Assembly (NCBI GenBank): GCA_030704615.1
Contig: CM060732.1
Span: 52,886,001-52,950,000 of the forward strand
Source: Takakia lepidozioides
Lineage: Eukaryota > Plantae > Bryophyta
Reading direction: 5' to 3'
DNA length: 64,000 bases
Under the pieces are notes generated by a model that did no database searches, had not been told where the DNA came from, and worked only from the letters and a program-made list of their open reading frames with translations. Positions 29,955 through 32,977 of the stretch are shown one piece after another. The position numbers and the translations under genes were made by a program. Numbering within the stretch: the stretch's first letter is position 1; every line of letters begins with the position of its first letter.

Positions 29955-32539
29955 TTATACATCACACTGATCAGTTGCTGCTGCATGCACCCATTGCTTG
30001 TCCCAAGGGTATGGAAACTGCAATGCAGCCGCATCATGACTAGTAAACCAGTCCTGGTACACAAACCTGCAAAACCAAGTCCCCCCCACCCGTTCAACAA
30101 ATACTAGCACTAGACATCCTTCGGAGATGAAACAAAGGGAATGTATGGCAGTGCGGGCAAGCAAAACAACCGGTCAGTACACTGGGCTAACTGAACAGCA
30201 AGCGGATGTAGCAATACTGACAGGTACAAGGATGGAGGGTGGAGGAGATGCACGCACACTTTGATAGGAGGCCTCGATATGATGGCAAGCACTTGGAGAT
30301 CCTCATTCTGCTTTGTGTTTCGCAACTGCCCCCAGGCCCACTACACTGAATCAGCCAGGAGATTTCCAATATGCAAGCAAGAGCAGTCCTCTTGCGCTCT
30401 CTACAACTCCAATATTGCTTTCGCTGCTTAACGTTTTGCACCCGGTTCAAAGTGCCTGGTACACATTGTGACAAACAAAGATCCCAACTGCGGAAAACAA
30501 ATGTCACCTGGTGCACTGAATCCACAGGAATAGTGAAAGTTGTGTTTGCAGATATTTCAAACTCCAGGGGCTCCCCAGGAAAGGAAGTGTGCGAGGCGAG
30601 AGCAAGGAAGAGGGTGCCACCACCCTTGAGTATCAAAAAAACCTCTTCACACTCATGCCGATGAATGGGAGTCCCTGAGCCTGGTGCAAACGTTTGCAGC
30701 CAAACCTCCACCTACATTGATAAAACAACACAGCAGCCTGGTGACAAGAGTTGATTACAGCATGACACAAGGCAACACTATTTTGGAAGTATCTCCTGAG
30801 GTATCGGCATGTTTTCAGTTTTCCATACTCGTTTACATGGCTAGTTTGGGGCAACTGGCAAAGGTACATGTTAAGAGCTAAATGTCCCTCGTATATCCCC
30901 AAACTCAAAATCACAACTGGGTACTTGGCACATATACCCATATGGTACTTCTAGTCCCCTTATCCCCTTAAGTACATTCCTCCATAGTCAAAAACCAGCT
31001 TTAGAGTGTAACCTGGTGAGGCCTTACCCCCTGACAAAGAAGGTCCACAGGCTACAGGAAGCAGACCAGAAGGGTAAACCTCCCCTTATCAGGTCAATCG
31101 CCATCACCATCAACCTTTTATTTTCCTGGGATTACAACCTCGTGACTACGATGCTTCACGTGCCGTAGATCATCCTACCCTAGGGAGATAAACTTAAGCA
31201 GCCAACTGGGACAGTCGTGCCGACCCACTATCACCTTCACTAGTGGAAAAACCACCATACTCAAGAGTAGCTAGAAGTTGATAAACTAGCTATGCCTGGA
31301 TATGATGTGCTTAACACACCCCATAGTGGACCCGAGAGGCTGTGGTGAGGGGGCCCCTAGGCAAGACTTGTCAATATTAACCTGAAGCACAAGTCGGTTT
31401 GTCCTTAACAATTACCTTACGGCTTATGTTACGGTGGTTAAAGAGCAACCAGAATTGTACTAATTGACTGTTCCTCTGAACCCTGGCTATGGTATTGCCT
31501 ACAGGGGACAATGACTGCACAAAACAACTGTGAGGTTTTAACACAACAGGGTAAGAGACTTCGCCTGAAATACGTAGTTACAGCCACCAGCCTTCAACAA
31601 CAAGACAACAGGGAATGAAGTGTTGATGGAAGACCAGCCATTGACATCACACTAGATGGTATTAAATGAGTGGGAGTAAGTTACCTCTTTCATGCCATGG
31701 TGATGCGCCCCTGCGATGGTAATGTGAGACAATCCAAGCCGACCATAGCTGTCTTGTAACAGGTCACTCACATTCCTGACCACAGGAATATCTGCCAAAT
31801 AGAATCTTGACAACAAATTACTGCAGAGTAAATTTCTCTCTTGACATTGACCATGTCTAGCAATCCAGGGATGTAAAGTCTTTGCAGTAAGGGCATCCAA
31901 CAATACCTTCAATCTTCTATCTCTCTCTCTCCCCCTCTTTCTCTCACTCGTGACATCAATGCAACTGCTAAACAACACTCATCAGCTGTAGCAAGCCTGG
32001 TGGTTATCTGGGGCTCAATTTTTCTGATGGGATTCAGACCCCAAACCAGTTATAATAACCAATTTTTCATAAGGACAGGTCTACACACATCTGCAGCTGT
32101 TTTTAGTATTTGAGAGGTTCGAGACACAGCTGAAAGGTATTCAACCGGTGTGAATTCTGGGTTGAATTTCCCATCAGATAAATCCTGTGGGGATGAGCCC
32201 TTGGGAGATAATCTGGGCAGACTCAACCTCATTCGCACCAGTAAGCATCTCTACCGATATCGGAGTGGCTGTTAGCAATGGTAATTGGCCCCAGGTTGCT
32301 CTCCTCCGGGAGCGGGATCCATGCTCACAAAGCTATGGAAGCAGAGTAAGTGAGGACATCTCTCTTCGTATACATACATTGGAGAACATTGAAGGAGTGG
32401 CACGAGAGGAACAAGTACCAGGTATTGGACAAATTTCGCGATTTTCCGCAGCTTTGCATTTCGATAAGCGAAAGGCGAGAGCGAGGATCACAATCACCAC
32501 CCCATAATAACAACACTTTGGATGGCTGAATCCAGACAT
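29955..32539 (-). CDS. ABP1: Auxin-binding protein 1; 5 exons 32539-32419, 31791-31685, 30711-30508, 30325-30258, 30066-29955
   Basis: Signal peptide, then [30 protein letters not shown]|[25 protein letters not shown] (Box A), VHQ|[20 protein letters not shown]|VFVY.DW...H....L.FPYPWD. Canonical introns. Confidence 0.96.
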
Positions 32540-32743
32540 CTCCTCCTCGCGCTTGACGCTCCCTCGCAACAAAAGCTAAGAACAAAGCTGTCCTCGACTA
32601 CAGGATAAATTTTCAAAGGGAACACCTTTCACTAAACAACCAAAACAGTATTCTTCACAACATGACCTCCGATCTCCATTTCCATCTATCCTTCCTGTAT
32701 TCTCCCTCTCTCCCACCCCTCCCTCCCTCACCCGGGATCAGGC

Positions 32744-32977
32744 CTAAGAACCATCTTCGTCTGTGAGCACAAGCTCCAAAGGTTTGGGCCTATTCCTGAC
32801 CAGATTTTGCTTCTGCTCGTGCCTATACTTTTGGTACATAAGATTTCCAATCACAAACACAAAAACGCCGGTGCCGATTGCTCCCATCATGAGATTGGGC
32901 TTTGTATGAAGCTCAGGGTTTACAAGGCGCGAGAAGGGTGAGGACCTCCTGAGCCAATCGTTAGGATCCCCACTCAT
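32744..32977 (-). CDS. SMIM8/DUF4500-like small single-pass membrane protein (77 aa)
   Basis: FSRLVNPELHTKPNLMMGAIG matches the recalled SMIM8 motif F(R)xVNPELFxKPNxxxMxxG. It is followed by one hydrophobic segment (TGVFVFVIGNLMY) and a charged tail. Confidence 0.75.
   Translation of the reverse strand: MSGDPNDWLRRSSPFSRLVNPELHTKPNLMMGAIGTGVFVFVIGNLMYQKYRHEQKQNLVRNRPKPLELVLTDEDGS

What the first reader, a model, noticed from the sequence alone, without database searches (positions are those of the whole stretch)
32419..32977. Candidate bicistronic nuclear transcript: SMIM8-like microprotein ORF directly upstream of ABP1
Seen: a 77-aa conserved-looking ORF (32977-32744) stops only ~205 bp before the ABP1 ATG (32539) on the same strand. 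The gap contains an apparent intron: donor cgg|GTGAGG at 32731, 12 nt after the stop, and acceptor atttatcctgtAG at 32598, giving 134 nt. Splicing removes all three ATGs in the gap and leaves ~70 nt of AUG-free intercistronic RNA. There is hardly room for a separate 3' end plus promoter. Whether the intron belongs to the ABP1 5'UTR or the SMIM8 3'UTR, the two transcription units must overlap. Inference: one mRNA may encode a small membrane protein and ABP1, with ABP1 made by leaky scanning or reinitiation, which would couple or attenuate ABP1 translation. Known background: bicistronic nuclear loci occur in green algae and occasionally in plants. I do not know of this pairing being described.
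Basis: partly seen in the sequence, partly recalled or inferred. Interest (0 to 1): 0.8.

Follow-up and report, generated by a model that had tools for sequence, protein, structure and literature searches.

The report
Conserved SMIM8–ABP1 two-gene moss transcript
A small, probably mitochondrial membrane-protein gene sits directly in front of the auxin-binding protein gene ABP1. In three other mosses both lie on one spliced RNA, so this looks like an ancient two-protein message of mosses and at least one liverwort, and I found no paper describing it.

Summary
A 77-aa ORF (32977-32744, minus strand) is a true SMIM8/DUF4500 family member. It ends 204 nt before the ABP1 start codon at 32539. All three ATGs in the gap lie inside a GT..AG candidate intron (32731-32598).

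The comparative evidence is strong:
- The same head-to-tail pair, with a 72-387 nt gap, occurs in Physcomitrium, Ceratodon, Sphagnum, an unnamed moss and the liverwort Calypogeia.
- Spliced RNA contigs from Physcomitrium (two runs), the unnamed moss (two datasets) and Sphagnum carry both ORFs.
- In Sphagnum a 288-nt intron inside the spacer is spliced out and leaves 99 AUG-free nt.
- ORF1 is under purifying selection (dN/dS 0.02-0.27).

The pair is unlinked in Riccia, Selaginella and Diphasiastrum.

Leaky scanning is unlikely because ORF1 has A at -3 and internal AUGs. Reinitiation or an internal ABP1 start site remains open. Short-read contigs cannot exclude overlapping separate transcripts.

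I found no paper on this pairing. It is a new member of a known kind (CDC26-TTM3-type bicistrons). The scan noted similar bicistronic loci elsewhere in this genome (COA5-POLD3, CFAP20), but not this pair.

The parts
32744..32977 (-). ORF1: a 77-aa SMIM8-like (DUF4500) single-pass membrane microprotein. The stop codon is included.
   Evidence: PF14937, E 9e-8, above the gathering score. (alignments showing the invariant NPELHxKPN motif and a hydrophobic helix). (dN/dS 0.02-0.27).
32540..32743 (-). Intercistronic spacer: 204 nt unspliced with 3 ATGs; 70 nt and ATG-free if the candidate intron is removed.
32598..32731 (-). Candidate spacer intron, 134 nt, GTGAGG...CCTGTAG. It is predicted only; no RNA was available for this genome.
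   Evidence: composition T 27%, G 38%, C 7%. The precedent is the proven 288-nt spacer intron in Sphagnum, L013 5312-5599 against transcript L015. The donor contexts are similar.
32716..32733 (-). G-quadruplex-type motif GGGTGAGGGAGGGAGGGG on the sense strand, spanning the candidate donor site.
   Evidence: The window holds 15 such motifs over both strands, so this is not rare. Its function is unknown.
32419..32539 (-). ABP1 exon 1 (start codon and signal-peptide-like hydrophobic N-terminus).
31685..31791 (-). ABP1 exon 2.
30508..30711 (-). ABP1 exon 3 (cupin core, contains HRHECEE).
   Evidence: PF02041, E 4.5e-29..
30258..30325 (-). ABP1 exon 4.
29955..30066 (-). ABP1 exon 5 with stop codon. 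There is no KDEL at the C-terminus.
32978..33100 (-). Presumed 5' leader of the joint transcript. The transcription start is unknown. A possible acceptor lies near 33098 and a possible AUG-GGU-stop mini-uORF near 33045.
   Evidence: Sequence reading only. It is inferred by analogy to the leaders of L002, L009 and L015.

Best explanation
SMIM8-like and ABP1 form one conserved dicistronic transcription unit in mosses and at least one leafy liverwort. A promoter upstream of the SMIM8-like ORF drives a pre-mRNA that carries that ORF, a short spacer and the five ABP1 exons.

In Sphagnum the spacer contains a small intron. In this genome such an intron is predicted. Its removal takes out every spacer AUG and leaves about 70-100 nt.

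Scanning ribosomes first translate the microprotein. It is a homologue of animal SMIM8, which a 2026 preprint places in the mitochondrial inner membrane. ABP1 is then made at a lower rate, most probably by reinitiation after ORF1 terminates. A possible extra contribution comes from a minor internal start site.

On this reading ORF1 acts both as a protein gene and as a long upstream ORF that attenuates ABP1 translation and probably exposes the RNA to NMD.

Shown: the two ORFs, their families, selection on ORF1, conserved colinearity, joint spliced RNA contigs in three other moss taxa, and the Sphagnum spacer intron.

Inferred: the same holds in this genome, a single promoter serves both ORFs, and the translation mechanism.
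For: ORF identities.

Conserved same-strand adjacency, with the distance from the ORF1 stop to the ABP1 ATG:
- window: 204 nt (70 nt if spliced)
- P. patens L002: 103 nt
- Ceratodon L007: 91 nt, annotated as the adjacent genes M758_4G173600 and M758_4G173500
- Calypogeia L008: 72 nt with no AUG
- unnamed moss L009/L001: 312/317 nt
- Sphagnum L015: 99 nt spliced and AUG-free
.

RNA evidence:
- L002 and L003 come from two SRA runs.
- L009 and L023 come from a Logan run and a JGI dataset.
- L015 is from Sphagnum.
- In all of them the ABP1 introns are removed and the full ORF1 lies upstream.
- L009/L023 also splice a leader exon about 1.2 kb upstream onto the ORF1 exon.

Sphagnum spacer intron.

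Purifying selection on ORF1: for example L001 versus L009, dN 0.006 and dS 0.29.

ORF1 also exists as a stand-alone gene elsewhere (Riccia, Diphasiastrum, Ceratopteris), so it is a real protein gene.

Human SMIM8 location: preprint 10.64898/2026.04.03.716438.
Against: - No RNA data for this genome.
- All RNA evidence is short-read assembly. Such assembly merges same-strand transcripts that overlap by one k-mer or more, so no single molecule spanning both ORFs has been shown.
- Spacers in P. patens (3 AUGs) and L009 (7 AUGs) are not AUG-free. ORF1 has a good -3 A and internal AUGs. Translation of ABP1 from the joint RNA should therefore be inefficient there.
- In Arabidopsis, second ORFs of readthrough bicistrons are rarely translated and the RNAs are NMD targets (PMC9768141).
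- GenBank annotations of Ceratodon and P. patens model the two as separate genes.
- The linkage is absent in Riccia, Selaginella and Diphasiastrum.
- The window's candidate intron is unusually G-rich and C-poor.
Confidence: 0.65

Rival explanations
1. These are two separate but overlapping transcription units. ABP1 has its own start site inside or just after the SMIM8-like ORF. SMIM8 mRNAs end in the spacer, the spacer intron or ABP1 exon 1. The joint contigs are then either assembly merges or minor readthrough transcripts with intergenic splicing. Such transcripts would be NMD substrates and would yield little ABP1, as described for 271 Arabidopsis loci.
For: - PMC9768141 reports intergenic splicing in 158 readthrough loci and finds the second ORFs rarely translated.
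- The Sphagnum spacer intron holds a long A-run that could mark an intronic poly(A) site.
- The Ceratodon spacer has AATAAA 19 nt before the ABP1 ATG.
- The purine-rich GA tract after the window's ORF1 stop could be a GA-type core promoter element. This rests on my own knowledge and was not tested.
- Database annotations keep two gene models.
- Several spacers contain AUGs.
Against: - Gaps of 72-103 nt leave no room for a terminator plus promoter. An independent ABP1 promoter would have to lie inside a coding sequence under strong purifying selection.
- That arrangement would also have to be kept from Sphagnum to Bryopsida to a liverwort.
- Contigs of about 1.4-1.9 kb with both ORFs recur across datasets: L002/L003, L009/L023, L015, and 13 Logan contigs for the P. 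patens ORF1 cluster with longest contigs of 1812-1856 nt.
Confidence: 0.25
2. The ORF is essentially a conserved-peptide upstream ORF. Its only role here is cis-regulation of ABP1, by ribosome stalling or NMD, and it does not produce a functional protein.
For: - The ORF lies in what would otherwise be the ABP1 leader.
- The peptide sequence is conserved.
Against: - The protein belongs to a family shared with animals (PF14937).
- It survives as a stand-alone gene where ABP1 is not adjacent: two Riccia paralogues, Diphasiastrum on chromosome 04 with ABP1 on 06, and Sphagnum paralogues that keep only an ABP1 relic.
- Conservation covers the transmembrane helix, as expected for a membrane protein.
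Confidence: 0.05
3. The adjacency is chance or plain conserved microsynteny of two independent genes with no functional coupling.
For: Neighbouring genes can stay linked in slowly rearranging bryophyte genomes.
Against: The same order, strand and a gap below 400 nt recur in six taxa spanning mosses and a liverwort. Spliced RNA contigs join the two ORFs, including one splice junction across the spacer.
Confidence: 0.03

Closest known systems
CDC26-TTM3 bicistronic transcript of land plants (Lorenzo-Orts et al. 2019, as cited in PMC9768141 and PMC11291117)
   Same: A small conserved protein of about 65-80 aa is encoded upstream of a larger, functionally unrelated protein on one nuclear mRNA. The arrangement is conserved over long evolutionary distances. 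The upstream ORF behaves formally like a long uORF.
   Different: The gene pair is different. Here the linkage is seen only in mosses and one liverwort and is lost in the vascular plants checked. No experimental proof of a single RNA molecule or of translation exists. At least one lineage has an intron inside the spacer.
Green-algal polycistronic loci (Gallaher et al. 2021, PMC7896298; leaky-scanning study PMC11291117)
   Same: Both have colinear ORFs on one transcript, often with a small organellar or membrane protein upstream, and the arrangement is conserved between species.
   Different: Algal ORF1s have weak Kozak-like contexts and few alternative AUGs, which fits leaky scanning. Here ORF1 has A at -3 in all species and up to 5 internal AUGs. 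This defining mechanistic signature is therefore not met.
Arabidopsis readthrough transcripts with intergenic splicing (Kurihara et al. 2022, PMC9768141)
   Same: An intron between the first gene's 3' region and the second gene's 5' region is spliced out in a bicistronic RNA. This is proven in Sphagnum and predicted here. The RNA is expected to be NMD-sensitive.
   Different: In Arabidopsis most second genes have their own start sites and normal intergenic distances, and no deep conservation is reported. Here the spacer is 72-103 nt in three taxa and the arrangement spans both mosses and a liverwort.
Animal SMIM8 (PF14937/DUF4500)
   Same: Same Pfam family, similar size, one transmembrane helix and a conserved N-terminal NPEL..KPN-type motif.
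   Different: The animal gene is monocistronic. The mitochondrial inner-membrane location is shown only for the human protein (preprint) and is untested in plants.

Membership tests
SMIM8 / DUF4500 (PF14937) | Match to the family HMM above Pfam's gathering score | tested here: met
   32.4 bits against a cut-off of 27, E 9e-8. Orthologues score 33.6 and 39 bits.
SMIM8 / DUF4500 (PF14937) | Small protein (about 70-100 aa) with one hydrophobic transmembrane helix after a conserved N-terminal motif | tested here: met
   77 aa. The alignment shows the invariant N20, P27-N28 and G35-T36 and the stretch GAIGTGVFVFVIGNL. No dedicated transmembrane predictor was run.
SMIM8 / DUF4500 (PF14937) | Mitochondrial inner-membrane location | not testable with these tools
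   Known only for human SMIM8 (preprint read).
ABP1 (PF02041, Auxin_BP) | Match to the family HMM and a cupin core with the metal-binding His/Glu box | tested here: met
   exon 3 gives E 4.5e-29. The sequence contains [10 protein letters not shown]. tblastn with named ABP1 proteins covers exons 2-5.
ABP1 (PF02041, Auxin_BP) | C-terminal KDEL ER-retention signal, as in angiosperm ABP1 | tested here: not met
   The C-terminus reads ...TDQCDV. Moss ABP1s are known to lack KDEL (PMC2766497), so this is not disqualifying for a bryophyte ABP1.
Bicistronic nuclear mRNA (CDC26-TTM3 / algal type) | Both ORFs on one mature RNA molecule | tested here: inconclusive
   Spliced short-read contigs carry both ORFs in P. 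patens, an unnamed moss and Sphagnum. There is no RNA for this genome and no long reads anywhere.
Bicistronic nuclear mRNA (CDC26-TTM3 / algal type) | Colinearity conserved between distant species, with both ORFs under purifying selection | tested here: met
   (six taxa). (dN/dS of ORF1). Selection on ABP1 was not measured here; its conservation is seen only.
Bicistronic nuclear mRNA (CDC26-TTM3 / algal type) | Both proteins translated from that RNA, with no independent start site for ORF2 | not testable with these tools
   This needs Ribo-seq, CAGE and reporter or mutant work.
Algal leaky-scanning bicistrons | Weak ORF1 start context and depletion of AUGs between the ORF1 start and the ORF2 start | tested here: not met
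   A at -3 in all ORF1s. Internal AUGs: window 4, P. patens 5, L009 4, Ceratodon 1. Spacer AUGs: 0 to 7.
Conserved-peptide uORF (purely regulatory) | The peptide exists only as a leader ORF of the regulated gene | tested here: not met
   Stand-alone homologues occur in Riccia, Diphasiastrum, Ceratopteris and Sphagnum paralogues.
Readthrough transcript with intergenic splicing | Intron between the first gene's 3' region and the second gene's 5' region | tested here: inconclusive
   Proven in Sphagnum. Only predicted in the window.
Readthrough transcript with intergenic splicing | Each gene also produces its own monocistronic mRNA | not testable with these tools
   No start-site or poly(A)-site data were available.

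The most novel reading that the evidence does not exclude
ABP1 output in bryophytes may be gated after transcription by the upstream SMIM8 cistron. A choice between splicing the spacer intron and ending the RNA there would decide whether ABP1 is on the message at all. ABP1 would then be translated only by reinitiation. In flowering plants reinitiation is stimulated by auxin through TOR and eIF3h (review PMC5469914). Auxin would thus raise production of its own binding protein from a message whose first product is a mitochondrial membrane protein, linking hormone perception to translational and energy status.
Probability: 0.1. Interest if true: 0.85.

Novelty: new member of a known kind. Interest (0 to 1): 0.62.

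Why it matters
ABP1 is one of the most debated proteins in plant hormone biology, and its expression control in early-diverging land plants has hardly been studied. If ABP1 in mosses is always the second cistron behind a conserved microprotein, three things follow:
- ABP1 knock-outs, promoter fusions and overexpression constructs in Physcomitrium need to take the upstream ORF into account. Disrupting the locus may hit two genes. This echoes the Arabidopsis abp1/BSM confusion (PMC4642851).
- It adds a deeply conserved land-plant bicistron to the single well-studied case, CDC26-TTM3.
- Together with the COA5-POLD3 and CFAP20 loci noted elsewhere in this genome, it hints that bryophytes keep a set of ancient [quoted passage not shown] messages like those of green algae.

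It also gives plant SMIM8, a family with no plant literature in the library searched, a first genomic context.

Tried and rejected
- An exact look-up of the 77-aa protein found nothing. The species is not in the protein collection.
- The TCP gene of the window gave at best 73% identity to unnamed sequences and 67-68% to P. patens, so I could not name the species. Earlier scan notes say it is probably Takakia. I did not verify this.
- Fusion hypothesis: long ABP1 proteins from charophyte transcriptomes (252-271 aa) show no SMIM8 similarity.
- Leaky scanning is rejected as the main mechanism.
- The first Sphagnum-like locus, L004, seemed unlinked. The metagenome scan then showed that it belongs to a paralogue type keeping only a weak ABP1 exon-3 relic, while the other paralogue type is linked.
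L005 was too short.
- The alignment of the window spacer to the Sphagnum spacer is uninformative apart from the donor neighbourhood.
- Literature searches for bicistronic ABP1, SMIM8/DUF4500 in plants, the SRA accessions and bryophyte bicistrons found nothing on this pairing.
- The first exon of the next gene downstream (around 27686) looked cystatin-like by eye but gave no Pfam hit.
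Full report
**What is in the window.** On the minus strand an ORF runs from ATG 32977 to the stop codon at 32746-32744 and encodes 77 aa. It matches Pfam PF14937 (DUF4500, the SMIM8 family) at 32.4 bits, above the gathering score of 27 (E 9e-8). 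The ABP1 start codon lies 204 nt downstream, at 32539. ABP1 exon 3 matches PF02041 at E 4.5e-29. tblastn with named ABP1 proteins covers exons 2 to 5.

My exon model is 32539-32419, 31791-31685, 30711-30508, 30325-30258 and 30066-29955. It gives 203 codons with no internal stop and no KDEL. A local script joined the exons only to count stops and printed no sequence.

The spacer holds three ATGs. The spliced spacer would be 70 nt with no ATG.

**No reads for this genome.** The 77-aa protein has no exact copy in the gene-position collection. Everything about RNA below comes from other species.

**Orthologous loci.** Protein searches gave plant homologues, and cluster look-ups named them:
- Ceratodon purpureus M758_4G173600
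- Physcomitrium patens PHYPA_006125
- several Sphagnum species
- Riccia fluitans
- Ceratopteris richardii
- Diphasiastrum complanatum

UniRef labels several of these "Small integral membrane protein 8".

The same order and strand, ORF1 then ABP1, is found in these loci:

| Taxon / locus | Nature of the sequence | ORF1 stop to ABP1 ATG |
|---|---|---|
| P. patens L002, L003 | RNA contigs | 103 nt |
| Ceratodon L007 | genome; both genes annotated as neighbours (M758_4G173600 / 173500) | 91 nt |
| Calypogeia fissa L008 (leafy liverwort) | genome; ORF1 not annotated | 72 nt, no AUG |
| Unnamed moss L001 | genome | 317 nt |
| Unnamed moss L009, L023 | RNA contigs | 312 nt |
| Sphagnum, P0103 type: L013, L016, L018, L020-L022 | genome | 387 nt unspliced in L013, the only locus measured (99 + 288) |
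| Sphagnum L015 | RNA contig | 99 nt spliced |

P. patens ABP1 is 100% identical to NCBI "auxin-binding protein T85 isoform X1".

**RNA evidence in orthologues.**
- L002 and L003 come from two different SRA runs. L009 comes from a Logan run. L023 and L015 are JGI contigs.
- In each contig the ABP1 ORF is uninterrupted (222-227 aa where complete) although the genomic genes have introns, and the complete ORF1 lies upstream.
- L009 and L023 align to genomic L001 as a leader exon (about 439-511) spliced to position 1722. Next comes one exon holding ORF1, the unspliced spacer and ABP1 exon 1, followed by ABP1 exons 2 and 3.
- L015 aligns to genomic L013 as 4865-5311, then 5600 onward, then the ABP1 exons. 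A 288-nt GT-AG intron (5312-5599) therefore lies inside the spacer. Its donor is 56 nt after the ORF1 stop and its acceptor is 43 nt before the ABP1 ATG. The intron holds 4 ATGs and the spliced spacer holds none.
The donor neighbourhoods also look alike: CTGATCCCGG|GTGAGGGAG in the window and CTGATTTTTGGGAG|GTGAGAGAG in Sphagnum.
- The window's candidate intron has a typical T content (27% against 28-34% in the four ABP1 introns) but is unusually G-rich and C-poor.

**ORF1 is a real gene.** Pairwise dN/dS is 0.02 for L001 versus L009 (dN 0.006, dS 0.29) and 0.12-0.27 for the more distant pairs that could be estimated, apart from one saturated pair. The N-terminal motif and the hydrophobic helix are conserved from liverworts to ferns.

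ORF1 also persists where ABP1 is not adjacent:
- Both Riccia paralogues have no ABP1 within 4 and 8 kb downstream.
- Diphasiastrum has ORF1 on chromosome 04 and ABP1 on 06, judged from locus tags.
- Selaginella has tandem ABP1 copies with no DUF4500 in the 5 kb upstream.
- The second Sphagnum paralogue type has only a weak ABP1 exon-3 relic about 1.06 kb downstream.

ORF1 is therefore not merely a regulatory uORF. Human SMIM8 is reported as a mitochondrial inner-membrane protein (preprint). This is the only functional lead and it is untested in plants.

**How ABP1 could be translated.** All ORF1 start codons have A at -3. ORF1 contains internal AUGs: 4 in the window, 5 in P. patens, 4 in L009 and 1 in Ceratodon. 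This is the opposite of the green-algal signature of weak context and AUG depletion that supports leaky scanning (PMC11291117).

Spacers are AUG-free in Calypogeia, in spliced Sphagnum and in the window if it is spliced. Ceratodon has one AUG-stop. P. patens has 3 AUGs and L009 has 7. Overall AUG depletion is therefore not significant.

I favour reinitiation after ORF1, possibly with a minor internal start site. This is inference. Because four ABP1 introns follow the ORF1 stop codon, the joint RNA should be NMD-prone, as shown for Arabidopsis readthrough bicistrons (PMC9768141).

**Main caveat and rival.** De Bruijn assemblies join same-strand transcripts that overlap. The contigs therefore prove continuous transcription and splicing across the spacer, but not that single molecules carry both ORFs.

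The rival is two overlapping units, with the joint RNA a minor NMD-targeted readthrough product. Several observations fit it:
- the A-run in the Sphagnum intron
- AATAAA in the Ceratodon spacer
- spacer AUGs in two species

Against it, three taxa have 72-103 nt gaps. An independent ABP1 promoter would then have to sit inside a strongly constrained coding sequence across mosses and a liverwort.

I rate the options as follows: dicistronic unit 0.65, overlapping separate units 0.25, purely regulatory uORF 0.05, coincidence 0.03.

**Species.** The window's TCP protein has no close named relative. Its SMIM8 is closest to Sphagnum P0103, at 68%. Earlier notes of this scan call the genome "probably Takakia". 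I did not verify this. If it is correct, the linkage spans all major moss lineages plus a liverwort.

**Novelty.** Searches of the held library found no paper on SMIM8/DUF4500 in plants or on a bicistronic ABP1. The algal polycistron paper does not mention either gene. GenBank annotations of Ceratodon and P. patens list the two as adjacent hypothetical genes, so the sequences are public but the arrangement appears undescribed. It is a new member of a known kind, the conserved plant or algal bicistrons. Earlier notes of this scan report analogous loci elsewhere in this genome, COA5-POLD3 and a membrane peptide with CFAP20. I did not test them.

Noticed in passing
window 32716-32733 (-): A G-quadruplex-type motif (GGGTGAGGGAGGGAGGGG, followed by more GA-rich sequence) sits exactly on the candidate splice donor after the ORF1 stop. 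It could act as an intronic G-run splicing enhancer, as a scanning barrier if the intron is retained, or as a GA-type promoter element. The window holds 15 such motifs over both strands.
   Followed up: partly
L012, L014, L019, L030 (Sphagnum-type metagenome contigs), about 1.06 kb downstream of the SMIM8 ORF: The second Sphagnum SMIM8 paralogue type (P0099) keeps only a weak ABP1 exon-3-like fragment (43-48 aa, 44-47% identity) downstream. It looks like a decayed ABP1 copy left after duplication, while ORF1 stays intact.
   Followed up: partly
L015 93-140 (Sphagnum transcript leader): A short leader uORF ends with a stop codon that overlaps the SMIM8 start codon (tcATGAgt). The leaders of L002 and L009 also hold one or two short uORFs.
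   Followed up: no
L007 4910-5000 (Ceratodon spacer): The 91-nt spacer contains a minimal AUG-stop uORF (gcATGTGA) and an AATAAA hexamer 19 nt before the ABP1 ATG.
   Followed up: no
L010 4027-5651 (Selaginella moellendorffii): Two ABP1 gene models lie in tandem and overlap in the annotation (195 aa and 159 aa). No DUF4500 ORF is found in the 5 kb upstream.
   Followed up: partly
L008 4683-4928 (Calypogeia fissa): The 81-aa SMIM8-like ORF (PF14937, 39 bits) lies 72 nt upstream of ABP1 and is absent from the gene calls listed for that genome record.
   Followed up: partly
window 46071-47816 (-), 13190-14416 (+), 54175-59866 (-): Neighbouring genes: a single-exon TCP transcription factor, a PPR protein, and an LRR receptor-like kinase in two large ORFs. 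None of them bears on the finding.
   Followed up: partly
window about 33040-33050 (-): A possible Met-Gly-stop mini-uORF (ATGGGTTGA) lies in the presumed leader about 65 nt upstream of the ORF1 start. Its position relative to the transcription start is unknown.
   Followed up: no
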